IMG/VR virus record: IMGVR_UViG_3300028558_000791
Span: 186,001 to 250,000 of that record
Strand: one strand, 5' to 3'
DNA length: 64,000 nucleotides
Shown here: piece after piece, positions 26,533 to 62,170 of the stretch
Layout: each line of letters opens with the position of its first letter
Numbering within the stretch: the stretch's first letter is position 1
Made by a program: the position numbers and the translations under genes
The notes under the pieces: model-generated
The model's input: only the letters and a program-made list of their open reading frames with translations
The model's database searches: none
What the model was told of the DNA's origin: nothing

Positions 26533-27690
26533 ATGCAGCTACACAATCGTTTATCCAATTTGTTTCAAAAAGAAACTGACAGACTACTCAAGGGTTTCCT
26601 CAACGATAATCCCGATGTACTTAAGAAGTATGTTGAAGGTGGTGTTGTTGCCGTAGGCGCCGTTCTCAGACCAATCAATTCCTTTATGAGACACCTATTA
26701 GTGGTTCAAGGATTGGACCCGGAGGCCGTTCCTGGCGAGAAGCAAAGGCTTCTTGTCCTACAGTCTCTAACCAATTTCTTCGATTCAAAGCATGAAAAAG
26801 ACTTTGATGATGATTACGATCTATCTTGGGTTAATCAAAAGTTTGAAAAGACCAGAGGCGCTCTCAAAGACCTAAAGATGACTAAAGATAAGTTTATGGA
26901 ACTTACTGACCTATCTAGACTTCCAAATGTAAGAACATCTACCGTTCCTACTGTGGAAAGATTAGAAGATCTAACTGGTGAGCCAATTGATCATCTTGCT
27001 CAAAGAGTAAATCCAGTTGCTCCTGAACCAGAGAAGCGTGAGGCTCGTCTTACCTTTTCTGAACGAGCTGAAAAGTTGAAGAGAATTGCTCAAGATATTA
27101 GATCAGAATCTAAAGATTTCAATCCAGGTGATGCTATTCAGCAATTGAGAAGCTTTATGAATGACCTCGGCAAGCAGCTTGAAGATGTCAAGCCAGAGGT
27201 TGAAGAAAAGTCAGCTCCTCTAAAGCCAGGCAAGAAGAAGCTAAACAAAGGTAAGAGAGTCGGTTCAGGACTTAGAGTTCAGCGTGTTTCTAATACAGAA
27301 CCGGTGAAGGAAGTGCCAAGCACCCTAACTGTTGAGTCTGATCGTAAAGTACGCCCACCAGCAATACGTGAACCAGGCCGTAATCTAAGAGACTTGGCTT
27401 CTCAAAAGAAGGCAGAAATCAAGGCTGCTAAAGAAGCTACCCCTGAATTTAAGGCAGAGGCTGCTCGCAAATTAGCTAGAGCTACCGAGCTAACTCATCT
27501 TATGGCTCAAAAGGGTTTAGTTGAAGCTAGCGATACTGCTTTTAACACCCAGGTTGATTCTATGAAGAATTGGTCTGATAACAATTTTGATGCATTGGAA
27601 AGAGTAGTAACTAAGTACGGCCCTACTAAGGATGCCGTTGCAGAGAACAAATTCAAGGGTTCTTTCAGAAGAGCCAAGAATAAGGTATAA
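26533..27690 (+). CDS. Hypothetical protein carrying a copy of the scaffold C-terminal domain
   Basis: 385 aa; 27469-27624 aligns ungapped (20/52 identical) with 59998-60153 of the protease-scaffold ORF. Confidence 0.8.
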   Translation: MQLHNRLSNLFQKETDRLLKGFLNDNPDVLKKYVEGGVVAVGAVLRPINSFMRHLLVVQGLDPEAVPGEKQRLLVLQSLTNFFDSKHEKDFDDDYDLSWVNQKFEKTRGALKDLKMTKDKFMELTDLSRLPNVRTSTVPTVERLEDLTGEPIDHLAQRVNPVAPEPEKREARLTFSERAEKLKRIAQDIRSESKDFNPGDAIQQLRSFMNDLGKQLEDVKPEVEEKSAPLKPGKKKLNKGKRVGSGLRVQRVSNTEPVKEVPSTLTVESDRKVRPPAIREPGRNLRDLASQKKAEIKAAKEATPEFKAEAARKLARATELTHLMAQKGLVEASDTAFNTQVDSMKNWSDNNFDALERVVTKYGPTKDAVAENKFKGSFRRAKNKV

Positions 27691-43197: not shown

Positions 43198-43971
43198 ATG
43201 AAACTCCGCGAACTGCTTCAAGAAATGAAGAGAGTACAAGAAAAGATAGGCTCATCACCAGCCTATATTTGCGGAGGTACGCCCAGAGATAAGTACATGG
43301 GACAATTACAGAACATTGCTGACATAGATGTTACAACCGGTGATAAGACGGTTGATTACCTATCTCAAGAATTTTTCATTGAGTTTCGTAAGAAATACAA
43401 CGTTACTCGTAAGACAATGGAAGATGGCCACAGCACTATCTTTATCGGCAGTCTAAAAGTAGACTTCTCATCCAACTTTATGGTTCCTAACGTGGATCAA
43501 GAGTTAGCTAAGATAGGAATTAAAAATCCTTCTAACATACAGAGAGAAATGTTTAGTCGTGACTTTACGTGTAACTCTTTATTACTGACAACGGACCTTA
43601 AGCAGATTCTCGATCCAACTAAAAGAGGATTCAAAGATATCAAGGAAAAGAAAATCAGGACTTGTTTAGCTCCAGAGATTACTCTAACTTCTAATAGGAA
43701 TAGAGTTGTAAGGGCTATTTATCTAGCTTGCAAATTAGATTTCGACATAGATGATTCAATTATTGCGTATGTAAAGAAGTATCCACAAACTGTTAAGATT
43801 TCAACTGAAAAAGCCATGAATGATAAGTTGAATGAAGCTTTCTCTAGGAATCCAGAGAAGGCGGCGGAGTTAATTTCCAAGATGAATTTGTGGACTCAGA
43901 TTCCAATTACGGAAAAAGTTTATCCGTACTACATGAAACATATCAAAGGAAAAGCTAATGTCAGTAAATAA
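43198..43971 (+). CDS. CCA-adding enzyme/poly(A) polymerase family nucleotidyltransferase (class II), short form
   Basis: AYICGGTPRD, DIDVTT, RDFTCNS, DPTKRG..DI, RVVRAI..ACKLDF. Confidence 0.88.
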   Translation: MKLRELLQEMKRVQEKIGSSPAYICGGTPRDKYMGQLQNIADIDVTTGDKTVDYLSQEFFIEFRKKYNVTRKTMEDGHSTIFIGSLKVDFSSNFMVPNVDQELAKIGIKNPSNIQREMFSRDFTCNSLLLTTDLKQILDPTKRGFKDIKEKKIRTCLAPEITLTSNRNRVVRAIYLACKLDFDIDDSIIAYVKKYPQTVKISTEKAMNDKLNEAFSRNPEKAAELISKMNLWTQIPITEKVYPYYMKHIKGKANVSK

Positions 43972-45025
43972 GAAGGGATATTTTCAAGGTGGTGGCGGAG
44001 TCAACGAACCAACGCCCGGCGAAAAGAAATACAAGTCGGATCCGGCTTTGGTTGTTCAGCCGCGCTTTGAAGAACCATTTTATCGCAACTACGATTTGTA
44101 TACAATTCCTGGTATGGAGCACATCGGCCCAGGCACCGGGTACCATGGCCTACAAAATTACGATAGCGTCCAGGAATTTCTAGAAGCAAGACGCAAGAGG
44201 ATGAAGGACCGCTACGTAGCGGATGATTCCTGGCAATTAGATTCTGGCAAACGAACTAAAGAAAATCCGGGCATCAAAGCTCGTGCCGCTATTTTTGAAA
44301 GAATTATCAAGACTGCTGGACCTAATTACGATTTAGGTAAAGGGCTCTACCAAGAGATGAGTGATGGTAAGGTTGATAGTGTAGAGGAATTTAGAGAAGA
44401 AGGCAACCATGGTCCCGGCGCTCTAATGATGGCAGATGATAATGCTGACTATATGTTACCACCTAAAGAACATGGTACCAGTATCTATAATTGGAAGAAC
44501 AGTCCTTATCAAGGAACTCCTGGTGCCAAAAACAAGAAAAAGAAGAAGGATGTCAATCATATTGATTTCCCAATTGATGATGAGATTAACCATGATGGCG
44601 AGATTTATCCAAGTGAAGAATCTTACCACAAGCCAGGATTAGTCGGACCTAGTGGTATAGATAACGTTGCCACCTTCCCAGGTGAAACGGGAGCAACTGA
44701 CTTCTCATCCTACATGAATTCAACTGATATTGCTGGTGAACACTCTTATCTACCAGAGCACGACTTAATGGATAGGGGTGACGATGCCCTCAATTTTGGT
44801 CAGGATTTGGAAGATGAACAGGGCCCAGCCAGAGGGCTTCAAGATGATGACCTTCAAAAACTTTTTAATAAGTACCTAACTCCCGATGAGACCGGTTTAT
44901 TTGGACTACCAGACGGTGTAGACCCAGAGGGCCACGATGCTGACCAGACTCAACAGGTAGAAGAGCCTTTCACCGGAACTTCCGACATAGGTACTCAAAT
45001 GTATGAGGATAAGTGGAATATCTAA
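43958..45025 (+). CDS. Acidic low-complexity hypothetical protein beginning with the scaffold-repeat motif
   Basis: N-terminal KKGYFQGGGGVNEPTPGEKKY matches the repeats in 56566..60294. Confidence 0.8.
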   Translation: MSVNKKGYFQGGGGVNEPTPGEKKYKSDPALVVQPRFEEPFYRNYDLYTIPGMEHIGPGTGYHGLQNYDSVQEFLEARRKRMKDRYVADDSWQLDSGKRTKENPGIKARAAIFERIIKTAGPNYDLGKGLYQEMSDGKVDSVEEFREEGNHGPGALMMADDNADYMLPPKEHGTSIYNWKNSPYQGTPGAKNKKKKKDVNHIDFPIDDEINHDGEIYPSEESYHKPGLVGPSGIDNVATFPGETGATDFSSYMNSTDIAGEHSYLPEHDLMDRGDDALNFGQDLEDEQGPARGLQDDDLQKLFNKYLTPDETGLFGLPDGVDPEGHDADQTQQVEEPFTGTSDIGTQMYEDKWNI

Positions 45026-47411: not shown

Positions 47412-49295
47412 ATGCCAAGTCTACATATTGAAAATAAAGAAATGTTCGAGAAGATGAAGAAGCAACTTGCAATGCTTGACCCTGTAACTTTTTGCGAGTC
47501 CAATTTAACATTGGAAGGAGAGCCATTCAAACTAAGTGGTAATGGATATAAGCCGTTCTCAGATATCTATAGATACATCGGAATCAAAGCATTAGAGCCA
47601 GATGCAAAACCAGTTATCTTAGTTAAGGGACGTCAGGTAGGAGCCACTACGATGGCCAGCGCCCTAGAAATGTACTTCATGGGTTCTGGATTATTTGGTG
47701 ATGGATTCCGTCCACCAATCCGTATCATTCATGCATTCCCTCAATTGGAATTAGCTGCCGCTTATTCAAAGACCAAGCTTCAGCAAATGATTAGTCAGGC
47801 TAAGATTCCCGAAGGAACTCCAGAAAACAAGGCTTCCCGCCCAAAGTCTTTCATGCAGCAATTGCTTGATCAGTCATCTCCAACTAATGACTCTTTGCAC
47901 TTCAAACAGTTTATTGGCGGAAACCATTTGTGGGTTGAGTCAACTGGTATTGATGCCGACAGAATCATGGGTCGTACCGCTGACATTCTATTCTTTGACG
48001 AAGTCCAGAAGACTACCAGCCAAGCCATCGGAAACGCGCTCAAGATTCTAACCAACGCTAAGTATGGTAGACCAACTAAGGGCGTACAAGTTTTCTTTGG
48101 AACGCCTCGTCGTAAGGGATCTGATTACCACAAGATGTGGCAGTCATCTTCTCAACAGTATTACTATTTAGGATGTGAGAGCTGTAAAGAACATTTCCCA
48201 CTATATACTCCAGGATCTGATGATTGGGAGAAAGTTTGGATTCACGGTAAAGTTGTTAAGTGCTCTAAGTGCGGACATGAACAAGATAAGCTACAAGCAC
48301 AGGAACGTGGTAAATGGGTAGCCTTTAAGAATCCAAATGACCCAGACTGTGATATGATTGGCTTTCATATTAATCAGCTTTACATGCCTAAATTCACACG
48401 AGAAGATATCGATAAGGAAAAGCCGGGCCGTCATCCAATCAATACGGAACGTGTTTTTCAAAACGAAGTTCTTGGAGAGTTTTACCAGGGCGATGCAAGT
48501 CCATTGTCTCCAGATGAAGTTCGCACCATGTGCGCTGACTTCGAGAGAAAGTTTAGCCCACGTATTCTTCCATCAAAAGGTATTAACCAATATTTTACTG
48601 TACTTGGAATCGATTATGGCGCTCGTTCCGACTTGGAGCAATTGGCCGATCCAGAAAGAGTTAAGCCGGCAGGACAGTCATACAGCACGGCTGTTGTTCT
48701 ACAAACTAAGGGCGCTCAATTGTTATCAATCGAGTTTGCTACCAAGTTCAAGCGTAATGACGTTGAAAGTAAAAAAGGAATCATTGATCAACTGATGAGA
48801 CAATATAGTATTCAGTTGGCGGTCGGAGACATTGGTTACTCCAATGACTTCTCTTCTATGTTGCATAACACGTATGGAGATAGGTATTTAGTTTCTCGTG
48901 CCCATAATAAGATTAATGACCATGTCAAATTCAATCATGAAGCATTTCCAAAAGAAATCATTTTTGAAAGAGACTTCTACATTACTGAACTTTATGATCA
49001 GATGAAGAAGGGGATGATTAGATTTCCATTTGGAGATTATGAAAAGATAGCCTGGTTGATTGAACACAGTTGCAGTATGGAACTAAAGCCATCTATTTCT
49101 AAATATGGAGATCATACAGTTCATTATGTGAAAGGTGGAACTCCAAACGACGGGTTTATGGCATTGTTGAATGCCTATTTAGCCTTTAAGTTCTTGGTAA
49201 GTAGAGGATTTACAAATAATAATCCGGCTAATCATACAGCCAAAAACCTAACCAAACCCATGGTAATGTCTGGTTATGTGCCCAGGAAGTTCTAA
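47412..49295 (+). CDS. terL: Terminase large subunit
   Basis: VILVKGRQVGATT, LFFDEVQ, FGTP, zinc module CESC...CSKC, GFHINQL, NEVLGE, nuclease LGIDYG, DIGY, DGFMA. Confidence 0.92.
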   Translation: MPSLHIENKEMFEKMKKQLAMLDPVTFCESNLTLEGEPFKLSGNGYKPFSDIYRYIGIKALEPDAKPVILVKGRQVGATTMASALEMYFMGSGLFGDGFRPPIRIIHAFPQLELAAAYSKTKLQQMISQAKIPEGTPENKASRPKSFMQQLLDQSSPTNDSLHFKQFIGGNHLWVESTGIDADRIMGRTADILFFDEVQKTTSQAIGNALKILTNAKYGRPTKGVQVFFGTPRRKGSDYHKMWQSSSQQYYYLGCESCKEHFPLYTPGSDDWEKVWIHGKVVKCSKCGHEQDKLQAQERGKWVAFKNPNDPDCDMIGFHINQLYMPKFTREDIDKEKPGRHPINTERVFQNEVLGEFYQGDASPLSPDEVRTMCADFERKFSPRILPSKGINQYFTVLGIDYGARSDLEQLADPERVKPAGQSYSTAVVLQTKGAQLLSIEFATKFKRNDVESKKGIIDQLMRQYSIQLAVGDIGYSNDFSSMLHNTYGDRYLVSRAHNKINDHVKFNHEAFPKEIIFERDFYITELYDQMKKGMIRFPFGDYEKIAWLIEHSCSMELKPSISKYGDHTVHYVKGGTPNDGFMALLNAYLAFKFLVSRGFTNNNPANHTAKNLTKPMVMSGYVPRKF

Positions 49296-49375: not shown

Positions 49376-51253
49376 ATGGCTGGTATTAAAAAATCAGGTT
49401 TAGGGGAGGCTCCTTCCTTTTCAGCGAGATTCTTGGAAGGTAGATCCACTACCCCACAGGTCAGCGCCATTATGGCTCATGGCGTTTCAGGAGAGAGAAG
49501 AGTTATTCTTTCTGATGAAGTAGACCAAGGCTATTTTCGCGATGGCTCAGGCCCTAATTACAATAAGATGGCGTTAGCTAACGCCCCTACAAATGCTTCT
49601 AACGTAGTTTCATCTACTGGCGTAAAGAAATATGGACAGGCAGTTAGCAGTTCTGGTGGTATGTTTCGCGGTATTCATGGCGATACTGTCAAGCAAACCC
49701 CTGAAGTTTATTCGCCATTGTGGCTGAACAGCAACTTAAATCTTCCCCGCGACCGTGCAACTATTAATGCATGGTGTCGTAGCTTTTTCGCATTGAATCC
49801 ATTCGTGCACAATGCAATCAGTTTGCATAGCACTTATCCAATTAGCAAGCTTTCTATCAAATGTCCTAACAAGGATATTGAAAAGTTCTTCGATGATATG
49901 ATTGAAGAAATTGACCTAATGAATATCTGTATTCAAATCGCCCAAGAGTATTGGCTCTTAGGAGAAGCGTTTGTTTATGCAGAACTGGATGAAGGTAAAG
50001 GTAAGTGGAGTCGCCTACACATTCAAAATCCAGACTTCATGATTGTCAAACGTACGGTCGTAGCCAGCGAACCAATCATCATGCTTCGTCCTGATGAGAA
50101 TCTCAAGAAGATCATTTTCTCTAATCGTCCAACCGATATTGAACAGCGTAAGCAGCTTAACCAGCACATTATCGATTCTGTCAGACGCGGAGAAAACATT
50201 CCACTAGACAACTTCCACGTATCACATTTGGCCCGTAGAATTAGTCCTTACGAAATTAGAGGTACTGGACTTCCAGTCTGTATTTTCCGTCAGTTGATGC
50301 TTTTCGACAAGCTTCGTGAATCCAAGTACGCCCAGTCCGATAATATGATTAACCCATTGACTTTGGTCAAGATTGGTTCGGCCGATTACAAGCCAACCTT
50401 CGCTGACCTTGAAGCATGGAGAGGCGTATTCGAAGAAGCCCAGTACGACAAGGACTTTAAGATTTTCACTCATGAAGGTGTTGCCGTTGAAAGAGTTGGT
50501 TGGGGACAGGGTATCTATGATATCTCTGGAGACATCACTCAACTTATTAAGGAAATCTTCGTTGGTATGTTCGTTCCACCAGTAATGATGGATGGTGGTG
50601 ATACAACTACTTATGCTAACGGATCTGTAGCTCTTGACGTTCTTCGTCAGAGATACATGCAGTTTCGCAATATGATGTCCCAATGGTTGAAGACCAAGAT
50701 TTTCGCCCCAATCTCTAAGATTCAAGGGTTCTACGACTACTCTGGTGGTGAAAAGCAACTCATTGTTCCAGAAATTGATTGGAACCATATGTCTTTGTTT
50801 GATGCAGACACTTACATCAATAGCTTGGTAACTCTATCTCAGGGACAGGCTGACCAGAAGAGAGTCTCCGTTCATACTTTGTATCGTTCATTGGGTCTTG
50901 AGTATGAAGACGAAGTACGCAAGATGCGTAAAGAAAATGTTCAGAATGCAATCTCCAAGAAGGAAATGGCAGCTCTAGAATCTATGGACCTCAATGCACT
51001 ACGTGCCCTGGATGACCAGGATGAAATTCCAGAGCCAAAACAACCGGGTGCAGGTCAAGAGCAACCACTACCAGGCGAAACTCCAGGTGGAGCCCCTCCA
51101 GGCGGTGGAATGCCGGATCTTGGTGGCCTACCAGGCGGACCTCCTCCACCACCTCCACCAGCAGGTGGCCCTCCACCCCCTCCGAGTGGCGCTTCAGCGG
51201 GTCTTCCTCCACCAGGTGGCGGAGCCCCTCCAGGTCCACCTCCAGCCGGATAA
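49376..51253 (+). CDS. Portal protein with Pro/Gly-rich C-terminal tail
   Basis: Directly after TerL; NPFVHNAISLH, EYWLLGEAFVY, LHIQNPD, SPYEIRGTG, IFVGMFVP, LRQRY; about 75-aa PG tail. Confidence 0.85.
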   Translation: MAGIKKSGLGEAPSFSARFLEGRSTTPQVSAIMAHGVSGERRVILSDEVDQGYFRDGSGPNYNKMALANAPTNASNVVSSTGVKKYGQAVSSSGGMFRGIHGDTVKQTPEVYSPLWLNSNLNLPRDRATINAWCRSFFALNPFVHNAISLHSTYPISKLSIKCPNKDIEKFFDDMIEEIDLMNICIQIAQEYWLLGEAFVYAELDEGKGKWSRLHIQNPDFMIVKRTVVASEPIIMLRPDENLKKIIFSNRPTDIEQRKQLNQHIIDSVRRGENIPLDNFHVSHLARRISPYEIRGTGLPVCIFRQLMLFDKLRESKYAQSDNMINPLTLVKIGSADYKPTFADLEAWRGVFEEAQYDKDFKIFTHEGVAVERVGWGQGIYDISGDITQLIKEIFVGMFVPPVMMDGGDTTTYANGSVALDVLRQRYMQFRNMMSQWLKTKIFAPISKIQGFYDYSGGEKQLIVPEIDWNHMSLFDADTYINSLVTLSQGQADQKRVSVHTLYRSLGLEYEDEVRKMRKENVQNAISKKEMAALESMDLNALRALDDQDEIPEPKQPGAGQEQPLPGETPGGAPPGGGMPDLGGLPGGPPPPPPPAGGPPPPPSGASAGLPPPGGGAPPGPPPAG

Positions 51254-55651: not shown

Positions 55652-56302
55652 ATGATTAAAAAGTCTTATTCCGTACAAATGAGCTATGATGTGTCTGACA
55701 GCGAAAAGCAGCAGGCAGAGAAAGCGCTATTGTATTTTAAGGCTGCTGAAAGATTCTTAATGCAATCTTCTGATCATTTGAATATTATGAAGACTCCATT
55801 TAAGGATAATCCAGATATGACGCCTGAAGATGTTATGAAGGCTCGTGCCGTCATTAGACGTTTCAGAGATAAAGCTATTGATAATTTTGACCAATTCAAA
55901 AAAGTAGCTTTTGATTGCGTTAATCTTATGCAGACTTTTGAAAGCGACACTCAAACTCTCAAACTAATGAAATCATTCATTGCTGCTATTGATGATTTGG
56001 AAGTTAGTGTTAATCAATTCTCAGAATTATTTAATGATTTGCACTCAAAAGACTTCGTCAAAAACGTAGTAACTTTCATTGAGAGTATCCAAAAGCAATG
56101 CGATGAGATTGATGAAATTATTGACGAAAGAATCAAGTCCCATATTCAAACCAATATATTGGCTAGTAGTTGGGTTGACTCAGTTAGCAATGATTTACAA
56201 ATGAAAATAGAGAAAAAGACACCATTAATCGTCGATCTCTATAATCAAAGACAAGAGCAGCTAAATGATGCTGTAGAGGAAAGGATGCCATCAGGGAAAT
56301 GA
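55652..56302 (+). CDS. Hypothetical coiled-coil protein
   Basis: 216 aa; DDLEV motif. Confidence 0.75.
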   Translation: MIKKSYSVQMSYDVSDSEKQQAEKALLYFKAAERFLMQSSDHLNIMKTPFKDNPDMTPEDVMKARAVIRRFRDKAIDNFDQFKKVAFDCVNLMQTFESDTQTLKLMKSFIAAIDDLEVSVNQFSELFNDLHSKDFVKNVVTFIESIQKQCDEIDEIIDERIKSHIQTNILASSWVDSVSNDLQMKIEKKTPLIVDLYNQRQEQLNDAVEERMPSGK

Positions 56303-56404
56303 AAATGGTAATATCGCTGTATATTAGATGAAGTTTTCGGTCGTAGATCGGAAAATTGTAGCAATATTACATTATACCTGTGTGGTCTCCCAATTGGAGA
56401 GTTT

Positions 56405-56560
56405 ATGTTCATTAAACACGGTGATGGAAAAATACTAGACGTTGTTGACGGAGAAGAGCTAACTGACGCTCAGAAGAAAGCTGTCAAAGATCGTTCTAAA
56501 GACCTCGTCAAACAATCTGACGATTCAACTGATTCTTCCAAGAAGAAGTCAGGGAGCTAA
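56405..56560 (+). CDS. Unlisted 51-aa protein
   Basis: SD GGAGA; MFIKHGDGKILDVVDGEELTDAQKKAVKDRSKDLVKQSDDSTDSSKKKSGS; ends 5 nt before the protease gene. Confidence 0.7.
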   Translation: MFIKHGDGKILDVVDGEELTDAQKKAVKDRSKDLVKQSDDSTDSSKKKSGS

Positions 56561-56565
56561 AACGA

Positions 56566-59500
56566 ATGCCCATTATTAAACTAGGCGAAGCCCACGAAAT
56601 TAAACTGGAGAACATGGAGTCATGTCTTCCTGAAGTGAGTGCTGAGGTCTTAGATAACTTTAGGAAGTTTGCAACCAATCTAAAGAAGATTGCTCCTAAA
56701 GCTGAAGACTTCCTCTATTTCTCTGCTGTTATGATGCATGCTGCTGAAGCATCTGCGCTTAACGAAGATGGTACACCAAAGCTAACCCTCAAAGGCGAAC
56801 CAGTCCAAGTAGGATGGGATACTAGTGGTGGTACATGGAAATGGGCATCTAATGACCCTAACATTAAGCCATATAAGAATTCTAATGGAGACATATTTCC
56901 AGAAGCAGAATTAACCAAAGCTTACAAGAAGTGGAAGCACAAGCCTCTATGCGTGGATCATAAATCGAGTTCGGTTGACCATGTTAGAGGTTTTATCGTT
57001 GATACTTATTACGACCGCTCACTCAAGAGAGTGATTGCATTGTGCGCCTTAGATAAGGCCGGATTCCCTCAATTAGCTAGACAAATTTCAACAGGCGTTT
57101 CTAACTGTGTATCCATGGGTACAGCAGTAGGAAGAGCCATCTGTTATGACTGCGGTAGAGTCGCTCGTGCTGAGCAAGACTTCTGCGCTCATATGAAGAA
57201 CAAGACTTGCTACGGTGAAATCAACGTAGACCTCAATCCAATTGAGTTATCTATCGTTGTAAATGGTGCAGACCCTAGAGCCAACATCAAACACATCATC
57301 GCCGCAGCAAACACAATGAACACTTACCTAGAGAATCGCGCTAAGGAACTAGAAAAAATAGCCGACCTCAAGTTTAGTGCTCAATTCAGTGTGTCAGATC
57401 TTAATGGTGACGAAGGTGGAGGAAGTGCTCAATTTAATGTTGATGCTACTGACATTAACCAGTTCAAGAGCGAATTAGACGAAGCATTCCGCAAAGTCCA
57501 AGAGTTCAAGAATGTAAAAATTTCTGAAAAAGATACTAATTCTACAGCATCTAATCAGACGTCGGGTTCGATCGCCATGGATGAAGGTGCACCCACGGAT
57601 TCTGGATTGGCTCTCCAAACTCCGCAAGCCATTAGGCTTGCATCCGCTGATGTAGAGGCGGAATCATTGGCTGAGCTTCAGCAAGTAACTGCATCAATTG
57701 AAGCTACGTTAGGTCAAATGAAGAAGAGCTTGGATAAGTTAGCAAAAACTTCTACTACTAAAAAACAAGAGGAAAACATGTCTGGATCAAAAGAAATCAA
57801 TAAGCAAGCTTATTTCCAGGGTGGCGGTGGCGTTAATGAACCAACTCCAGGCCAAGTTAAATATCCAAAGGACGGTCTTAACGAGCAACTTCGTGAACAC
57901 GAAGATAAGCACATGACCGGTCAACCACCTTTCCCTGAGGTTGGTCCAGTGGATGGAATGCATCCTTCTCCAGCTTCGGCTGATCCTTCTGACGAGCTTG
58001 CTCGTAAGAAGATGCTCGCTAGAGCAGAAGCAGAAGAGCGTGCCCTCAAGCGTAACGCCATTGTCAATATGGCCAAGGACGCATTGAAGAGCAAGGAAGC
58101 TTACTACCTCGGTGGTGGCGGTGTAAACGAGCCAACTCCAGGTAAAGTAAAGTATCCAAAAGACAAGCTCAACGAAGAGCTACGTGACTACGAAGATAAG
58201 CACATGGTTGGACAGCCTCCATTCCCAGGTGTTGGTCCAGTCGACGGCATGCACCCTTCTCCATCATCTGCTGATCCAAAGGATGAATTGAAGCGTAAGC
58301 AAATGCTCGCTCGTGCACAACTACGTGCCAGATTTGTCAAGGCCGCTAACAGTAACGGCACTCAGAACAGAGCCAGAAGCGCTTGGGAAGTATTCCTTGG
58401 TGACAAGCTATTGTTGACCGCATCTGTTGACGAACTCTCCGGTGGAAACACTGACGTTCTATATGACTCAATTGCTACTAAGGACTTCGGAGCCAAGTTG
58501 ATCGAAAAGGTCAAAGTTCAAGGCGCTGATGCAGTAAGCAAGCTAATTAAGAAAGCCCAAGGCGCTCCAGGCGCACCACCAGCCGGCCCTCCAGCAGGTG
58601 ATCCATCCAGTGCTCCACCTCCAGGCGGTGACATGGGTGCAGGCGCTCCAGATGCTGGTCCTCCAGCAGAAGACGCAGGCAAGTCTGGTGACCCAAAGCA
58701 AAGCGCAGTAGAACTCGCTGAGAAGGTAAGAGACCTAAGCTCTGACCTAGTAGAAGCAGTTCGTGCCCTAACCGGTGAACAAGCCGAAATGGGTGGCGCA
58801 GGCCCAGCACCAGATGCAGGTGGAGTTGGTGGCCCAGCCGGTGGTCCAATGGCCGCTGATGACCAGGATGCAAAGAAGAAGAAAGACTCTATGGAGTCCT
58901 CTGCTAACTTTAGCACCTCAACTCTCAACACCTTGAGAAAAGAATTGAATGGCGCACTTACTCATGCAATGAAGGAAGCTATTGCAGAGCTAACCGAACA
59001 CCAGCAAGAATTAGACATGATTGCCGGTATGTACGACAAGGGTGCTGTAACTCAATCTAACCAAGACTTTGTTGGAACTATCGTAGAAGACGCATTGAGC
59101 GAAGCTAAGACTGCTGTTGCAGACGGCTTTAAGCTAATGACCGCCTTCGTCAAGTATGCTCGTGGTACCAAGGCAATTGTCAAGCGTGCTGAGATTGAAT
59201 CAGAACTTGAATCACTAGCCGATGGAGACACTATGAGCGACAAGAAGGACAGTCACTCCGCAGACGGCGGTGACTTGATGGGACTAATTAATGACACCAA
59301 TGCAGACTTGGACGCAGTTCAAGAGATGATGGGTGACGACCAGGATCACGATCTTGGCGGTGAACTTGATGGCGATGGCCTAGCTGGACTCTTTGAAGAG
59401 GGTGGCGAAGGTGAAGAACATGGTCACGAGGAACCACTATTCGAAGGTTTGGCTGACGACAACGATCTCACTTTTGAACAAGGTGAGAAAGTACCACCAG

Positions 59501-60294
59501 AGTTGGCCGGAAAGAAGTTAACTATGGCATCATTTGATGATAGAGCAGGCCGTGCAGCTCTCAGGGCCAAGTTGGCTGCTGACGCTCTCGGAAAAGAAGA
59601 CGACGGAGAAGTTCAGGATATGTCCAAGCAAAAGTGGAGCGATATGCTAGATGCTGCTGACAAGCACTCTGACGGTCAAACCGAATTGGACGTCAAGCCA
59701 TCCGACAGCCTCGGATTGGTTGAGACCCTACCAGAAGTAAACAAGGCCATGATGGACGTTGCTAAAGCTCCACCAAAGGTTCGTAAGGAAGCAGAAGTAA
59801 TTCAGAGATTAGTTTCTGAAGGCAAGCTTGATCCAAATGATGTTGATGCACTCGCATCTTACGGATTGGATAAAGAAGCCGTTGCTTACTGGAAGAAGTA
59901 CTTCGGTGAAGTTGATGGTGGCAGTGAATTCGCCAGTGAGATGGTGAAGGAACATGTCAAGGCAGCTATGGAAGAAGAACTAAACACCTTCAGAGTCAAG
60001 CTAGCCCGTGCTTACGAACTAACTTACGATATGGTTGACCGTGGCCTATGCCGTCACGACAGAGTCACCATCTCTGATCAAGTTGACCAGATTATGAGAT
60101 TTAACGATGATGCATTCGAATCCTTGAAGAAGGTCGTTGCCCGTCATGAACCAGGTAATCTACGCAAGTCTGCTGGCGCAATGCCACAGGTTGGTCTCAG
60201 AGTTGACGGAGAATTCTCTCCAGCTCAAGCAGTCGAGGATGACTCTTATACCCAATTGTCAAGCCTCTTTGGTAACAAAAAGGGTGTGTTCTAA
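56566..60294 (+). CDS. Prohead protease-scaffold polyprotein, 1242 aa
   Basis: N-terminal NSNGDIFPEAEL..AY..W..KPLCVDH...VRGFIVD...VSMG...CYDCG...CAH...PIELSIVVNGADPRA resembles herpes-fold phage maturation proteases with a zinc insert; long repeat, acidic and helical C-terminal part; lies after portal. Confidence 0.75.
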   Translation: MPIIKLGEAHEIKLENMESCLPEVSAEVLDNFRKFATNLKKIAPKAEDFLYFSAVMMHAAEASALNEDGTPKLTLKGEPVQVGWDTSGGTWKWASNDPNIKPYKNSNGDIFPEAELTKAYKKWKHKPLCVDHKSSSVDHVRGFIVDTYYDRSLKRVIALCALDKAGFPQLARQISTGVSNCVSMGTAVGRAICYDCGRVARAEQDFCAHMKNKTCYGEINVDLNPIELSIVVNGADPRANIKHIIAAANTMNTYLENRAKELEKIADLKFSAQFSVSDLNGDEGGGSAQFNVDATDINQFKSELDEAFRKVQEFKNVKISEKDTNSTASNQTSGSIAMDEGAPTDSGLALQTPQAIRLASADVEAESLAELQQVTASIEATLGQMKKSLDKLAKTSTTKKQEENMSGSKEINKQAYFQGGGGVNEPTPGQVKYPKDGLNEQLREHEDKHMTGQPPFPEVGPVDGMHPSPASADPSDELARKKMLARAEAEERALKRNAIVNMAKDALKSKEAYYLGGGGVNEPTPGKVKYPKDKLNEELRDYEDKHMVGQPPFPGVGPVDGMHPSPSSADPKDELKRKQMLARAQLRARFVKAANSNGTQNRARSAWEVFLGDKLLLTASVDELSGGNTDVLYDSIATKDFGAKLIEKVKVQGADAVSKLIKKAQGAPGAPPAGPPAGDPSSAPPPGGDMGAGAPDAGPPAEDAGKSGDPKQSAVELAEKVRDLSSDLVEAVRALTGEQAEMGGAGPAPDAGGVGGPAGGPMAADDQDAKKKKDSMESSANFSTSTLNTLRKELNGALTHAMKEAIAELTEHQQELDMIAGMYDKGAVTQSNQDFVGTIVEDALSEAKTAVADGFKLMTAFVKYARGTKAIVKRAEIESELESLADGDTMSDKKDSHSADGGDLMGLINDTNADLDAVQEMMGDDQDHDLGGELDGDGLAGLFEEGGEGEEHGHEEPLFEGLADDNDLTFEQGEKVPPELAGKKLTMASFDDRAGRAALRAKLAADALGKEDDGEVQDMSKQKWSDMLDAADKHSDGQTELDVKPSDSLGLVETLPEVNKAMMDVAKAPPKVRKEAEVIQRLVSEGKLDPNDVDALASYGLDKEAVAYWKKYFGEVDGGSEFASEMVKEHVKAAMEEELNTFRVKLARAYELTYDMVDRGLCRHDRVTISDQVDQIMRFNDDAFESLKKVVARHEPGNLRKSAGAMPQVGLRVDGEFSPAQAVEDDSYTQLSSLFGNKKGVF
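57802..58317 (+). repeat. Two 225-nt (75-aa) direct repeats in the scaffold region
   Basis: 57802-58026 KQAYFQGGGGVNEPTPG...KKMLARA and 58093-58317 KEAYYLGGGGVNEPTPG...KQMLARA; many synonymous differences. Confidence 0.95.
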
Positions 60295-60318
60295 AGCTAA
60301 CCTAGAACGAGGATACAA

Positions 60319-61029
60319 ATGAAAAACCAGAGCGTATCAGATTTTGTAGCCGCAACTATGAATGCGGTGCTAAACAGCAAAGAACACAAGTCGTTGTTCG
60401 ATGTTCAATACAAGTATGCACAAGACATGAGTGATGCAAAAGACTCTTGTGGCAAGTGCGGATCTAAACACGGCGATGCAGATAGCTGCATGGCTGATGA
60501 TGACGACAATGACGCCCGTAAGGCTAAGAAGGATTCTGACTCAGACTCCTCTAGTGCTTGGGATGATGACAATGATGCTCGTAAGAAGAAGGATTCCGAT
60601 TCTGATTCCAGCGATGCAGATGATGATGAGAACGATGCCCGTAAGAAGAAGGACTCTGATTCTGACTCCAGCTCTGCTGATGACGATCTAGAAGTTTCTG
60701 CTGCATTCGACGTAGCTATCGACAGCTTGCTAACTGCATCTGCCGCTCTTGACTCCGTTGGTCTCGGTCGTGGTTCCTCACTTACCTTGAAGATTGCTTC
60801 TTTGGTTGTTGAAGCCAAGAAGAAGGACAAGGATTCCAAGAAGGACAAGAAGAAGAGTGACTCTCAATCTGCCAAGGACAAGAAGTCCAATCCATTCGCT
60901 AAGAAGAAGGATGACAAGAAGAAGAGTGACGACAAGAAGAAGAGCGATTCTCATTCTGCAAAGGATAAGAAGAGTGATTCTAAGTCTTCTAAAGACTCTA
61001 AGAAGCCAGCTTCTAAATCTTCCAAGTAA
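60319..61029 (+). CDS. Asp/Ser/Lys-rich low-complexity protein with helical A..LD..G module
   Basis: Three D-rich NDARKKKDSDSDSS-type repeats, K/D/S-rich tail, SD GAGGA. Confidence 0.8.
   Translation: MKNQSVSDFVAATMNAVLNSKEHKSLFDVQYKYAQDMSDAKDSCGKCGSKHGDADSCMADDDDNDARKAKKDSDSDSSSAWDDDNDARKKKDSDSDSSDADDDENDARKKKDSDSDSSSADDDLEVSAAFDVAIDSLLTASAALDSVGLGRGSSLTLKIASLVVEAKKKDKDSKKDKKKSDSQSAKDKKSNPFAKKKDDKKKSDDKKKSDSHSAKDKKSDSKSSKDSKKPASKSSK
60493..60687 (+). repeat. Three imperfect tandem repeats encoding (A)DDDxNDARKKKDSDSDSS
   Basis: About 60-66-nt units with synonymous variation. Confidence 0.85.
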
Positions 61030-61037
61030 GGATAACA

Positions 61038-61253
61038 ATGTACAAACAAAGCAGTTTTGAGGACGAACTCTATCGTTCGATGGAGAAGACTATAGTCAAA
61101 AATCAAACCGAAGATAAGCACGGTTTCAATAAGCTAGCTCAAGCTGCTGACCTTTTGAATGCGGCGGCCGATATTTTCGACCGTGCTGGTATGCAAGAGG
61201 AGTCGAAAGACGTTACTAATATTCTAGAAGAACTAGCTAAGGATCTCAAATGA
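61038..61253 (+). CDS. Small protein paralogous to the N-terminus of the next gene
   Basis: SFEDELYRSME...AADLLNAAADIFDRAG vs LFEDELVASME...AAECLHAALEIFEEQG; SD AAGGA. Confidence 0.8.
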   Translation: MYKQSSFEDELYRSMEKTIVKNQTEDKHGFNKLAQAADLLNAAADIFDRAGMQEESKDVTNILEELAKDLK

Positions 61254-62170
61254 GTAAAAGTCTATTTGAAGATGAATTAGTTGCTAGCATGGAGAGCCAG
61301 TTGCGCAAGCAGGGGTCGGCCGAGAAGCCAGCCCTTACTAAAGCTGCTGAGTGCCTCCATGCTGCTCTAGAAATTTTCGAAGAGCAGGGCCTGACCGCAA
61401 GAGCGGATCAGGTACTGCAACTTCTACAGAAGATTGCGCAAACCAACGAAGCACGTGACGTTCAGCAAATGCCATCAGTTCACAAACTAATGGAAGCTGG
61501 ATTGACTCAGCGTGATATGCATGAATTTGCTAAAGGCAGTCCAATTGCCAAGGCTAAATTCAATATGGTTCTGCGTGGTTTGGGATATTCTGATCATCAG
61601 ATTGGCAAGTTCATTGGTCCAACTAATGTTATGTCCGAAGATGATGCCAAGCAAGTTCTTGACCCAAATCGTTCATTCAGCAAGATTTATGACTGGATGA
61701 AGAACCCAGGCAAGCCAGTTGATCCAAGGAACCCACAGCCAGGTGAAGAGTTTTCTATCAAGAGCCTTCCAGTTACTGGTCCTGGCGATACTTTGCAGTT
61801 TGAGAGTCTCAAGCCAAAGCCAACTCAAGTTCCAAAAGACGAAGCTCTTGAGTTCAAGAGCATTGCTCAAAAAAAAAGATCAAATCTGACTGATCGTCAC
61901 ACCCATGGTCTAACTCCTGAAAAAGAAGTTGAGAACCTAAAGCATCACGGCACTCCTTTCAATATGGCTGATGATGTTCCTCTTCCATTTGATAGACACA
62001 ACGTCAAAGAGAAAGACGTCGATCCTGATTTTGCTGAGTTACTTAACTCACCAACGTTTGATCTTGATGCCTCTGACGATGAGTTAATGGGGATTGAAAT
62101 TAAAGATGATACTCTAGAAGTCTTTGATAACGATGGCCATATTGAGGATTTTGAAGACGAAAGAGATTAA
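61250..62170 (+). CDS. Hypothetical head-associated protein
   Basis: 306 aa; KIAQ, SIAQ, acidic tail DDTLEVFD. Confidence 0.8.
   Translation: MSKSLFEDELVASMESQLRKQGSAEKPALTKAAECLHAALEIFEEQGLTARADQVLQLLQKIAQTNEARDVQQMPSVHKLMEAGLTQRDMHEFAKGSPIAKAKFNMVLRGLGYSDHQIGKFIGPTNVMSEDDAKQVLDPNRSFSKIYDWMKNPGKPVDPRNPQPGEEFSIKSLPVTGPGDTLQFESLKPKPTQVPKDEALEFKSIAQKKRSNLTDRHTHGLTPEKEVENLKHHGTPFNMADDVPLPFDRHNVKEKDVDPDFAELLNSPTFDLDASDDELMGIEIKDDTLEVFDNDGHIEDFEDERD

What the first reader, a model, noticed from the sequence alone, without database searches (positions are those of the whole stretch)
57768..60294. Probable nested genes inside the protease-scaffold ORF
An in-frame ATG at 57778 has a good SD (GAGGAAAAC-ATG) and would start MSGSKEINKQAYFQGGGG, closely parallel to the true start of gene 43958 (MSVNKKGYFQGGGG). 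A second in-frame ATG at 59233 follows GGAGACACT, nearly identical to the GGAGACACG-ATG start of gene 36757. One 3.7-kb ORF may therefore yield protease-scaffold, a long scaffold and a short scaffold with a shared C-terminus. Nested scaffolds are established (lambda C/Nu3, herpesvirus), but two internal starts in a 1242-aa protein would be unusual.
Basis: partly seen in the sequence, partly recalled or inferred. Interest (0 to 1): 0.7.

Follow-up and report, generated by a model that had tools for sequence, protein, structure and literature searches.

The report
Nested scaffold genes inside protease gene
A 3.7-kb head-assembly gene of a 480-kb phage very probably makes three proteins from one reading frame (a protease-scaffold fusion and two shorter scaffolds), a known viral trick (lambda C/Nu3, herpesvirus) seen here with two conserved internal starts in a large family of huge phages.

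Summary
ORF 56566-60294 (1242 aa) has in-frame ATGs at 57778 (Met405) and 59233 (Met890), each 5 nt after a Shine-Dalgarno core.

In this one sequence that is not beyond chance: five internal ATGs score as well, about two expected. Comparison with about 70 distinct relatives (39-92% identity, mostly 200-450-kb phage contigs) singles out exactly these two sites.
- GAGGAA-N3-ATG is kept in 65 of 70 relatives. Four others keep a different Shine-Dalgarno core plus ATG, and the last was misread by the script but keeps the Met.
- The five codons before Met405 have the lowest synonymous variation in the gene.
- Gly887 (GGA) is the only one of 55 conserved glycine columns with an invariant codon.
- An unbiased scan finds just three conserved Shine-Dalgarno cores; two precede these ATGs.
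- Met405 lies in unusually unstructured mRNA and at a step towards capsid-gene-like codon usage.
- 107 of 110 full-length family representatives keep this Met.

The N-terminus resembles prohead proteases. The rest is predicted helical and disordered, like a scaffold, and the gene lies between portal and major capsid genes.

Verdict: the nested-gene reading is supported strongly for Met405 and well for Met890, within the clade above about 45-50% identity. It is a new variant of a known kind. No translation data exist.

The parts
56566..60294 (+). Full-length ORF, 1242 aa (133.6 kDa): prohead-protease domain + linker + scaffold-like part
   Evidence: The single long frame is kept in all 44 first-round loci. 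In the 1.84-billion-protein library the family counts 366 clusters, nearly all of them 1100-1580 aa.
56552..56556 (+). Shine-Dalgarno core (GGGAG) of the full-length start, 9 nt before ATG 56566
   Evidence: duplex energy -7.4 kcal/mol. It lies inside the 3' end of a small upstream ORF.
56665..57345 (+). Prohead (head maturation) protease-like domain, aa 34-260, with invariant His132 and Ser183 and a CxxC...CxH...C zinc-ribbon insertion
   Evidence: phrog_18299 head maturation protease, E 1.8e-12. tblastn and BLASTP to Bacillus phage G gp19: 34% identity over 224 aa, E 4e-30. Homologues are annotated prohead or capsid maturation protease in Rhodococcus phage E3 and Gordonia phage Stormageddon. 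There is no Pfam hit.
57346..57777 (+). Linker between protease and first internal start (aa 261-404): variable, helical and disordered
   Evidence: Alignment. AF2 predicts helices 241-266, 297-317 and 361-395, but with low confidence.
57514..57606 (+). Unexplained stretch of strong synonymous-site conservation (codons 317-347), 170-260 nt upstream of ATG405
   Evidence: 9-codon windows 317-322 have the lowest observed/expected values (0.14-0.23). Codon view. There is no conserved RNA fold and no repeated motif elsewhere in the genome. An internal promoter is a guess that was not tested.
57769..57774 (+). Shine-Dalgarno core 1 (GAGGAA), 3 nt before ATG405
   Evidence: GAG GAA is invariant at its synonymous sites. 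The 5-codon window 399-403 has the lowest synonymous observed/expected ratio of 1208 windows, 0.089. GAGGAA-N3-ATG is present in 65 of 70 distinct loci. It is replaced by AAGGA where the amino acids differ, as in L044, L048 and L094. GAGGA (L051) and GGAGGAG (L052) stand there in members of about 36-38% identity.
57778..60294 (+). Nested gene 1, predicted 'long scaffold', 838 aa (89.5 kDa), Met405-Phe1242
   Evidence: Met405 is invariant. A Met lies 4-22 residues before the first repeat motif in 107 of 110 full-length representatives, against 39 of 103 for later repeats. The mRNA +-25 nt around the ATG has mean MFE -1.6 against a gene mean of -9.1 kcal/mol, among the 3% least structured positions. 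Codon usage steps at about codon 400-440.
57778..58335 (+). Tandem repeat of an ~90-aa module (aa 405-490 and 500-590), each starting with the linear motif Y-F/Y-x-G-G-G-G-V-N-E-P-T-P-G-x-x-K-Y-P
   Evidence: The same motif stands at the N-terminus of the product of gene 43958..45025. AF2 predicts the motif as disordered.
58276..58563 (+). Small folded beta/alpha domain (aa 571-666), the only confidently folded non-helical part
   Evidence: AF2 pLDDT 85-89 for residues 167-262 of the 838-aa model. No significant fold match.
59224..59228 (+). Shine-Dalgarno core 2 (GGAGA), 4 nt before ATG890
   Evidence: Gly887 GGA is the only invariant codon among 55 conserved Gly columns. Most relatives have GA(A/G)GGAGA at -8.5 to -8.8 kcal/mol. 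The spacer varies by indels from 3 to 12 nt. In L095 and L097 the same GGAGA is encoded by Thr-Glu-Thr, and in L108 by His-Gly-Asp.
59233..60294 (+). Nested gene 2, predicted 'short scaffold', 353 aa (38.6 kDa), Met890-Phe1242
   Evidence: Met890 is kept in 94% of first-round relatives. GGAG lies 4-14 nt before an in-frame ATG in 55 of 61 distinct loci. It is absent in the most distant members (L044, L048, L084, L094, L109, L116). Met890 lies in a predicted disordered linker, aa 886-901.
59947..60156 (+). Conserved C-terminal helical module (aa 1128-1197) shared by all three products
   Evidence: It has a paralogous match in ORF 26533..27690 of the window. hhalign against phage G gp21 gives 72% probability, E 3.5e-5, for aa 1137-1191. 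AF2 pLDDT is 80-90.

Best explanation
ORF 56566-60294 is the prohead protease-scaffold gene of a huge (480-kb) tailed phage, and it holds two nested, in-frame, C-coterminal genes.

Ribosomes starting at ATG 56566 make a 134-kDa fusion: protease domain, linker, then scaffold. Ribosomes that load independently at the internal Shine-Dalgarno sequences start at ATG 57778 (Met405) and ATG 59233 (Met890). They make an 89.5-kDa 'long scaffold' and a 38.6-kDa 'short scaffold', both lacking the protease.

All three share the C-terminal helical part, which presumably docks them into the procapsid. This incorporates a few protease copies among many scaffold copies, at a ratio set by the relative strengths of the start sites. 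After assembly the protease would degrade the scaffold.

Shown here (in silico): the reading frame, the start-site signals, their conservation and synonymous constraint, the unstructured mRNA and the codon-usage step at Met405, the protease homology, the helical and disordered prediction, and the head-module context.

Inferred: actual initiation at the internal sites, the relative amounts, binding of the C-terminus to the capsid protein, proteolytic removal, and whether the internal products come from the same mRNA or from internal transcripts.
For: 1. Start signals. Both internal ATGs have canonical cores, GAGGAA and GGAGA, 5 nt from the GAGG or GGAG core to the ATG. These are the motif types enriched 6-7 fold before gene starts in this genome.

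2. Conservation of Met405. It is invariant in 34 of 34 first-round relatives. A Met is present before the first repeat motif in 107 of 110 full-length representatives of the 366-cluster family, against 39 of 103 for later repeats. Glu is favoured at -3/-4 and Ser/Thr at +1.

3. Nucleotide-level constraint. Codons 399-403 have the lowest synonymous observed/expected ratio of 1208 five-codon windows (0.089). CAA GAG GAA is fixed at its synonymous sites. Gly887 GGA is the only invariant codon among 55 conserved Gly columns.

4. The signal is kept when the protein changes.
- AAGGA replaces GAGGAA where the residues are KEKE or KKDS (L044, L048).
- GAGGA or GGAGGAG stands in members of 36-38% identity.
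- At site 2, GGAGA is encoded by Thr-Glu-Thr or His-Gly-Asp in some relatives.
- The spacer tolerates indels of 1-3 codons.
- In L030/L085 the ATG has moved two codons, behind a stronger GAGGGAGGA.

5. Counts. GAGGAA-N3-ATG occurs in 65 of 70 distinct loci. GGAG lies 4-14 nt before an in-frame ATG in 55 of 61.

6. Unbiased scan. Only three places in 1242 codons keep a Shine-Dalgarno core in 90% or more of relatives, and two of them sit just before Met405 and Met890. Of 38 internal Met columns, only these two have a strong Shine-Dalgarno sequence in 100% of relatives.

7. mRNA structure. Around ATG405 the mRNA is among the 3% least structured positions of the gene in 27 relatives.

8. Codon usage. 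The MCP-like score steps from about -0.2 (codons 1-400) to +0.05 to +0.2 (codons 440-1242). This is the largest 5'/3' difference among the 48 genes of 500 codons or more. Alone, the 3' part would rank above the genome's 99th percentile.

9. Identity.
- The protease domain matches phrog_18299 (E 1.8e-12), and phage G gp19 with E 4e-30; His132, Ser183 and the Cys ribbon are invariant.
- Residues 405-1242 are predicted as long helices joined by disordered linkers, and both internal Mets sit at linker boundaries.
- The gene lies after the large terminase and portal genes and before the major capsid gene.

10. Precedent. Nested protease-scaffold genes are established in lambda and HSV-1, and were shown by Ribo-seq in the archaeal virus HFTV1 (bioRxiv 10.64898/2026.09.13.751334).
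Against: - There is no experimental evidence of initiation, of transcripts or of protein products. The metatranscriptome runs hold only contigs of relatives and give no ends.
- In the single sequence the SD-ATG pairs are not beyond chance.
- Met890 is missing in the most divergent members (L044, L048, L084, L094, L109, L116). The mRNA around it is only moderately open (top 25%), and codon usage shows no further step there.
- The relatives are phylogenetically related, so counts of sequences are not independent events.
- The codon-usage weights come from a single reference gene, the major capsid protein (337 codons).
- The scaffold function of the C-terminal part is inferred. The complex prediction with the capsid protein gave no verdict and the fold searches found nothing significant.
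- The protease model was poor (pLDDT 44) and no Pfam protease family is matched.
Confidence: 0.8

Rival explanations
1. Only the first internal start (Met405) is a real nested gene. The SD-ATG at Met890 is a lineage-specific, weak or non-functional feature, so the gene yields two products, not three.
For: - Met890 and its GGAG are absent in the most distant members, whereas Met405 is family-wide.
- The mRNA around ATG890 is only moderately unstructured.
- Codon usage shows no step at 890.
- The five codons before Met890 taken together have an ordinary synonymous ratio of 0.78. Only the Gly887 and Ser883 codons are fixed.
Against: - Gly887 GGA is the single invariant Gly codon of 55.
- GGAG plus an in-frame ATG is kept in 55 of 61 distinct loci, despite spacer indels and changed amino-acid context.
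- In most relatives this Shine-Dalgarno sequence is stronger (-8.5 to -8.8 kcal/mol) than at the first start and than at about 94% of gene starts in this genome.
- It is one of only three conserved Shine-Dalgarno cores in the gene.
Confidence: 0.15
2. The ORF is a single polyprotein (as in P2 gpO). Smaller proteins arise only by cleavage by the N-terminal protease. The internal Met codons and purine-rich stretches are relics of an old gene fusion, or by-products of conserved Glu/Gly residues.
For: - Protease-scaffold fusions without a demonstrated internal start exist: P2 gpO, as summarised in the HFTV1 preprint.
- The repeat module also occurs at the N-terminus of a separate gene (43958), which fits an origin by fusion.
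- Phage G has its protease (gp19) and a weakly similar gp21 as separate genes.
Against: - A relic would not hold synonymous sites fixed over 39-92% identity while neighbouring codons turn over.
- It would not re-create a Shine-Dalgarno core from different amino acids.
- It would not keep the mRNA open at ATG405.
- It would not produce a codon-usage step at that point.
- The equivalent Met of the second repeat is freely replaced by Leu.
Confidence: 0.05
3. The conserved Shine-Dalgarno-like sequences are translational pause or regulatory sites at domain borders (or targets of an RNA-binding factor), not start sites.
For: Both lie at predicted borders between folded or helical segments and disordered linkers. 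A third conserved core, at codons 140-141, has no start codon after it.
Against: - Both cores are followed at canonical spacing by a conserved in-frame ATG, with Ser/Thr as second residue.
- When the ATG moves, the core moves with it, as in L030/L085.
- From the literature, not tested here: whether internal Shine-Dalgarno sequences pause ribosomes at all is disputed.
Confidence: 0.03

Closest known systems
Bacteriophage lambda C / Nu3 (protease and nested scaffold)
   Same: An in-frame internal start inside the head protease gene gives a C-coterminal scaffold. The gene lies between the portal and major capsid genes. The logic is the same: few protease copies co-assembled with many scaffold copies (textbook knowledge; cited as the model case in the HFTV1 preprint).
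   Different: - Lambda has one internal start and a much smaller gene.
- The lambda C protease belongs to another protease family; no sequence similarity was found here.
- Here there are two nested starts, a 1242-aa frame, and a tandem-repeat module at the N-terminus of the long product.
Herpesvirus protease / assembly-protein genes (HSV-1 UL26 / UL26.5; from memory, the cytomegalovirus UL80 set of several nested in-frame genes)
   Same: An N-terminal serine protease is fused to a scaffold, with nested C-coterminal products. More than two nested products occur in cytomegalovirus (from memory, not checked here).
   Different: The herpesvirus nested products come from separate internal promoters and mRNAs. 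Here the signals found are ribosome-binding sites, and an internal promoter is neither shown nor excluded. These are eukaryotic viruses, and no sequence similarity was tested.
Haloferax tailed virus 1 gp17 / gp17.5
   Same: The gene was annotated as a single protease-scaffold fusion and then shown, by Ribo-seq and mass spectrometry, to give a nested scaffold from an in-frame internal start. That is the kind of evidence still missing here.
   Different: It is an archaeal virus with a 481-codon gene and one internal start. No relation by sequence was tested.
Bacillus phage G gp19 (protease), with gp20 and gp21 downstream
   Same: It is the closest named relative of the protease domain: 34% identity, with the His, Ser and Cys-ribbon residues conserved. 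The genome size is similar (498 kb). gp21 shares a 55-residue C-terminal module with this protein (hhalign 72% probability, E 3.5e-5).
   Different: In phage G the protease is a separate 300-aa gene and is not fused to the putative scaffold, so no nested start is needed.
Phage P2 gpO (protease-scaffold fusion)
   Same: An N-terminal protease and a C-terminal scaffold lie in one polypeptide.
   Different: gpO is described as made full-length and then autoprocessed (as summarised). Here conserved internal start signals argue for separate initiation.
T4 gp21 protease with separate core proteins gp22 and the internal proteins
   Same: The prohead serine protease is probably of the same broad fold class: the language-model look-alikes include Peptidase_S77 and S78 clusters (a lead only). 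Several scaffold or core species occur in a large capsid.
   Different: In T4 these are separate genes. Pfam Peptidase_S77 is not matched here.

Membership tests
Nested protease-scaffold gene (lambda C/Nu3, HSV-1 UL26/UL26.5, HFTV1 gp17/gp17.5 type) | The full-length product carries a prohead (capsid maturation) protease domain at its N-terminus | tested here: met
   phrog_18299, E 1.8e-12. 34% identity over 224 aa to phage G gp19, E 4e-30. Homologues are annotated prohead or capsid maturation protease. His132 and Ser183 are invariant. Activity was not tested.
Nested protease-scaffold gene (lambda C/Nu3, HSV-1 UL26/UL26.5, HFTV1 gp17/gp17.5 type) | An in-frame internal start site with its own initiation signal gives a C-coterminal product without the protease | tested here: met
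   Met by sequence and comparative evidence only: conserved SD-ATG pairs, synonymous constraint, open mRNA and a codon-usage step. Initiation itself cannot be tested with these tools.
Nested protease-scaffold gene (lambda C/Nu3, HSV-1 UL26/UL26.5, HFTV1 gp17/gp17.5 type) | The shared C-terminal part is a scaffolding protein: helical, elongated, binds the capsid protein, and is removed on maturation | tested here: inconclusive
   AF2 predicts long helices and disordered linkers, mean pLDDT 59. The complex prediction with the major capsid protein gave no verdict. No significant fold match. Removal on maturation is not testable.
Nested protease-scaffold gene (lambda C/Nu3, HSV-1 UL26/UL26.5, HFTV1 gp17/gp17.5 type) | Position in the head-morphogenesis module, between the portal and major capsid genes | tested here: met
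   Large terminase at 47412-49295 and portal at 49376-51253. Major head protein (phrog_2522, E 2.9e-81) about 10 kb downstream, at G000:C1:256223-257236.
Nested protease-scaffold gene (lambda C/Nu3, HSV-1 UL26/UL26.5, HFTV1 gp17/gp17.5 type) | The nested product is made in excess over the full-length protease | tested here: inconclusive
   The evidence is indirect. Codon usage of codons 405-1242 is MCP-like (above the genome's 99th percentile), while codons 1-404 are ordinary. No expression data exist.
Peptidase S77 (T4 gp21 prohead core protease, Pfam PF03420) | Match to the family profile above Pfam's threshold | tested here: not met
   No Pfam family at E <= 0.01 for the whole protein. No protease family at E <= 1 for 23 aligned N-terminal parts. 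There are only language-model look-alikes. No PDB sequence match.
P2 gpO-like fusion (single product, autoprocessed) | No separate initiation of the scaffold part | tested here: not met
   Conserved internal start signals under nucleotide-level selection argue for separate initiation. No experimental test exists.

The most novel reading that the evidence does not exclude
In this family of 200-500-kb phages the head is built with a three-tier set of products from one frame: protease-scaffold, long scaffold and short scaffold. The two scaffold isoforms have distinct roles, for example an inner core or size-setting layer and an outer shell-contacting layer.

The N-terminal linear motif exposed by initiation at Met405 (M-S-x(3-9)-Y-F-Q-G-G-G-G-V-N-E-P-T-P-G) would be a docking or targeting signal. 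It is shared with at least one other head-module protein (gene 43958), and its variant form changes together in both proteins between genomes.

This would be a new way of addressing proteins to the interior of a very large procapsid, and of setting three stoichiometries from one gene.
Probability: 0.2. Interest if true: 0.7.

Novelty: new variant of a known kind. Interest (0 to 1): 0.5.

Why it matters
Huge phages must assemble capsids of thousands of subunits, and how they scaffold them is almost unknown.

- **Assembly design.** A whole family of huge phages (at least 366 sequence clusters) appears to use the lambda/herpesvirus solution, a scaffold nested inside the protease gene, but with two internal starts. 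This gives a concrete, testable model for how one gene could set the ratio of protease to two scaffold species.
- **Annotation.** In every relative looked at, the gene appears as a single long frame, or as fragments on short or error-prone contigs. Two abundant virion-assembly proteins per genome may therefore be missing from protein catalogues.
- **Method.** The case shows that synonymous-site conservation in metagenomic relatives can pick true nested starts out of the many chance SD-ATG pairs in a long gene.

Tried and rejected
- **Nucleotide search of GenBank phages.** No match. The protein search found only the protease domain in named phages.
- **Pfam, on the whole protein and on 23 N-terminal parts.** No protease family.
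- **PDB sequence searches.** Only coiled-coil noise.
- **AF2 model of aa 1-404.** Poor, pLDDT 44, so no fold search was made with it.
- **Foldseek of the 405-1242 model against PDB and BFVD.** Nothing at E <= 0.001. Weak rows for a cyanophage 'prohead scaffold and peptidase' and for phage G gp21 were used only as a lead, followed up.
- **Complex prediction, major capsid protein with aa 1055-1242.** No verdict; neither for nor against binding.
- **Metatranscriptome runs.** They hold only contigs of relatives (88-95% alike), with no read ends, so they say nothing about transcripts or internal promoters.
- **Split or stand-alone scaffold genes in nature.**
  - Database proteins that begin at the Met405- or Met890-equivalent sit at contig edges with the frame still open upstream.
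  - Those on two long ENA contigs lie among fragmented gene calls, which look like indel errors.
- **Sigma-70 promoter and terminator scan of 56000-61300.** At chance level.
- **Codons 317-347.** Searches for a conserved RNA fold, or for a motif repeated elsewhere in the genome, gave nothing.
- **Protease cleavage site at QEEN/M or in VNE/PTPG.** Considered and not pursued: the residues are not conserved as a site in distant members, and the specificity of this protease is unknown.

Full report
**What is there**

The window is bases 186001-250000 of a 480,838-bp virus record. The finding lies in ORF 56566..60294 on the + strand, 1242 aa.

- ATG 57778 is codon 405 and follows GAGGAAAAC.
- ATG 59233 is codon 890 and follows GGAGACACT. 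Both are in frame.
Gene 43958 begins MSVNKKGYFQGGGG after an AAAGGAAAAG stretch. The likely start of gene 36757 follows GGGAGACACG.

**Is it more than chance in this sequence? No.**

I took 506 long ORFs of the genome and scored the 17 nt before each ATG against the anti-Shine-Dalgarno tail.

- 24.5% of first ATGs and 5.6% of 2160 internal ATGs reach -6.0 kcal/mol.
- The ORF has 38 internal ATGs, and five of them reach that value (405, 690, 890, 905, 1019), where about two are expected.

**Relatives**

A scan of viral contigs gave 44 loci at 39-92% protein identity, and all keep one long frame. A second scan, made with an alignment, brought the set to about 70 distinct sequences, many on contigs of 200-450 kb. 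An exhaustive profile search of 1.84 billion representative proteins found 366 clusters. Nearly all are 1100-1580 aa long, with the Met405-equivalent at about position 340-470. This is the standard gene of a large family of huge phages, not a local oddity.

**First internal start (Met405)**

- Conservation. Met405 is invariant in all relatives that cover it, including the two at 39% identity, where the residues before it differ (QEEN-M, KEKE-M, KKDS-M).
- Codons. CAA GAG GAA never varies at its synonymous sites, while the codons on both sides do.
- Synonymous constraint. I used a pairwise observed/expected measure normalised per amino acid and per sequence pair. Codons 399-403 are the lowest of 1208 five-codon windows, at 0.089.
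- Wider set. GAGGAA-N3-ATG is present in frame in 65 of 70 loci, and four more have another core (AAGGA and the like) before the ATG. The last locus (L115) was misread by the script; it keeps a Met before its first repeat, and its Shine-Dalgarno sequence was not examined. Two members at 36-38% identity have GAGGA and GGAGGAG there.
- Protein level. 107 of 110 full-length representatives have a Met 4-22 residues before the first repeat motif, against 39 of 103 for later repeats. Glu is preferred at -3/-4 and Ser/Thr at +1.
- mRNA structure. The 53 nt around ATG405 fold with a mean of -1.6 kcal/mol in 27 relatives, against a gene mean of -9.1. That is among the 3% least structured positions.
- Codon usage. 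Scored by likeness to the major capsid gene, it is about -0.2 for codons 1-400 and +0.05 to +0.2 from codon 440 to the end. The genome's median gene scores -0.26 and its 99th percentile is +0.02. The 5'/3' difference is the largest of the 48 genes of 500 codons or more.

All of this is what a separately and more heavily translated nested gene should look like.

**Second internal start (Met890)**

- Met890 is kept in 94% of first-round relatives, and every one of them has a strong Shine-Dalgarno sequence. The median is -8.8 kcal/mol, stronger than in the window itself.
- Gly887 (GGA) is the only one of 55 conserved glycine columns whose codon never changes.
- In the wider set, 55 of 61 sequences have GGAG 4-14 nt before an in-frame ATG within 45 codons of a conserved anchor.
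- The spacer gains and loses one to three codons.
- In L030/L085 the ATG has moved two codons downstream, behind GAGGGAGGA.
- In L095/L097 the same GGAGA is spelled by Thr-Glu-Thr, and in L108 by His-Gly-Asp. The nucleotides are conserved, not the residues.
- The site is missing in the most distant members (L044, L048, L084, L094, L109, L116).
- The mRNA is only moderately open there, and codon usage shows no further step.

I therefore rate it lower than the first start, and as a feature of the clade above about 45-50% identity.

**An unbiased control**

I scanned every three-codon window of the alignment for a GGAG, GAGG or AGGA core present in at least 90% of relatives. This gives three places in the whole gene: codons 140-141 (Arg-Gly in the protease, with no start codon after it), 401-402 and 886-887. 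Of the 38 internal Met columns, only 405 and 890 have a strong Shine-Dalgarno sequence in all relatives.

**What the protein is**

- Protease domain. Residues 34-260 match PHROG 18299 (head maturation protease, E 1.8e-12) and Bacillus phage G gp19 (34% identity, E 4e-30). They also match proteins annotated prohead or capsid maturation protease in Rhodococcus phage E3 and Gordonia phage Stormageddon.
- Conserved residues. His132, Ser183 and a CxxC...CxH...C ribbon are invariant.
- Negative results. No Pfam protease family is matched, and the AF2 model of this part was poor. The fold class is therefore not established. Language-model look-alikes include Peptidase_S77 and S78 clusters, which is a lead only.
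- Residues 405-1242. They are predicted as long helices joined by disordered stretches, with one small beta/alpha domain (aa 571-666). Met890 falls in a disordered linker, aa 886-901.
- Tandem module. Residues 405-590 are a tandem duplication of a module that opens with the disordered motif YFQGGGGVNEPTPG..KYP.
- Context. The gene lies after the large terminase and portal genes, and the major head protein gene is about 10 kb downstream.
- Phage G. There the protease is a separate 300-aa gene. Two genes downstream, gp21 shares a 55-residue module with the C-terminus of this protein (hhalign 72% probability, E 3.5e-5).

**How it most likely works**

Three products of 133.6, 89.5 and 38.6 kDa share the C-terminal helical part. 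By analogy with lambda C/Nu3, HSV-1 UL26/UL26.5 and HFTV1 gp17/gp17.5, that shared part would take all three into the procapsid. A minority of protease-bearing chains would thus be built in among many scaffold chains and later digest them. Start-site strength would set the ratios.

These steps are inferred: binding to the capsid protein (the complex prediction gave no verdict), removal by proteolysis, the relative amounts, and whether internal transcripts contribute.

**Comparison and novelty**

The principle is known. New here:
- the family (huge phages, with a frame of 1100-1580 aa);
- two conserved nested starts rather than one;
- the fact that initiation at Met405 would expose, at an N-terminus, the same linear motif that opens the product of gene 43958.

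In five related genomes that second protein keeps the motif at or near its start. The motif variant (GGGGVNEP or GTEEP) is the same in both proteins of a genome, which suggests a common partner. I did not test this further.

**Limits**

- All the evidence is computational.
- The sequences are related by descent, so the counts overstate the number of independent events. The strongest arguments are those that use other columns of the same alignment as their control.
- The codon-usage weights rest on one reference gene.

**An unexplained observation**

Codons 317-347 (57514-57606) are the second region of strong synonymous conservation. I found no conserved RNA fold there and no repeated motif. 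An internal promoter for the nested genes is possible but untested.

Noticed in passing
window 57514-57606 (codons 317-347 of the ORF): This is the second-strongest synonymous-site conservation in the gene: AAA GAT ACT AAT ... GCA TCT AAT CAA TCG TCG GGT, and GAT TCT GGA TTG. It lies 170-260 nt upstream of ATG405. No conserved RNA fold, no Shine-Dalgarno sequence or start codon, and no similar motif elsewhere in the genome. It could be an internal promoter or another nucleic-acid signal.
   Followed up: partly
window 43958-45025, with orthologues L126, L127, L128, L130: The product of gene 43958 opens with the same linear motif as the Met405 product (MS..K.YFQGGGGVNEPTPG). In related genomes the motif variant (GGGGVNEP or GTEEP) matches the variant in that genome's protease-scaffold, which suggests a shared binding partner or processing enzyme. 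In L128 the motif follows an open upstream frame with no Met before it.
   Followed up: partly
window 27409-27627 (in ORF 26533..27690), and window 59947-60156: The C-terminal helical module of the protease-scaffold (aa 1128-1197) has a weak paralogue in the 385-aa ORF 26533..27690 (E 9e-6 within the genome). It also has a profile match in phage G gp21. It may be a shared capsid- or core-binding module.
   Followed up: partly
window 57142-57213 (aa 193-215): A CxxC...CxH...C zinc-ribbon-like insertion inside the protease domain is invariant in relatives and is also present in phage G gp19.
   Followed up: no
window 56405-56561: A small ORF of 51 codons, too short for the ORF list, fills most of the gap before the protease-scaffold gene. 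Its 3' end holds the Shine-Dalgarno sequence of the full-length start.
   Followed up: no
whole genome G000 (none in the window): A 14-nt motif, GCTCCCATTCACGG, occurs about 36 times in intergenic DNA and about 60 times genome-wide. It may be a regulatory or repeat element. Many tRNA-like T-loop words also occur in intergenic DNA.
   Followed up: no
L042 (IMGVR_UViG_3300032053_001017), linker region equivalent to aa 270-315: This relative carries a tandem duplication of about 50 aa in the variable linker between protease and first internal start, so that region tolerates length change.
   Followed up: no
representatives such as P0072, P0090, P0097, P0101 (about 1490-1580 aa): A subset of the family has an extra N-terminal part of about 350 aa before the protease domain. 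The Met405-equivalent then lies near residue 730-790.
   Followed up: no
ENA contigs of 506 kb and 486 kb (ERZ25039470, ERZ25039491; L050): In these long contigs the protease-scaffold frame is cut into many small gene calls. This looks like indel errors of long-read assembly rather than real gene splitting.
   Followed up: partly
window 60319-61029 and G000:C1:255346-256092: The gene just downstream of the protease-scaffold, and the gene just upstream of the major capsid gene, are among the genes with the most capsid-like codon usage in the genome. They are probably abundant head proteins (decoration or further scaffold); no family match was found.
   Followed up: no
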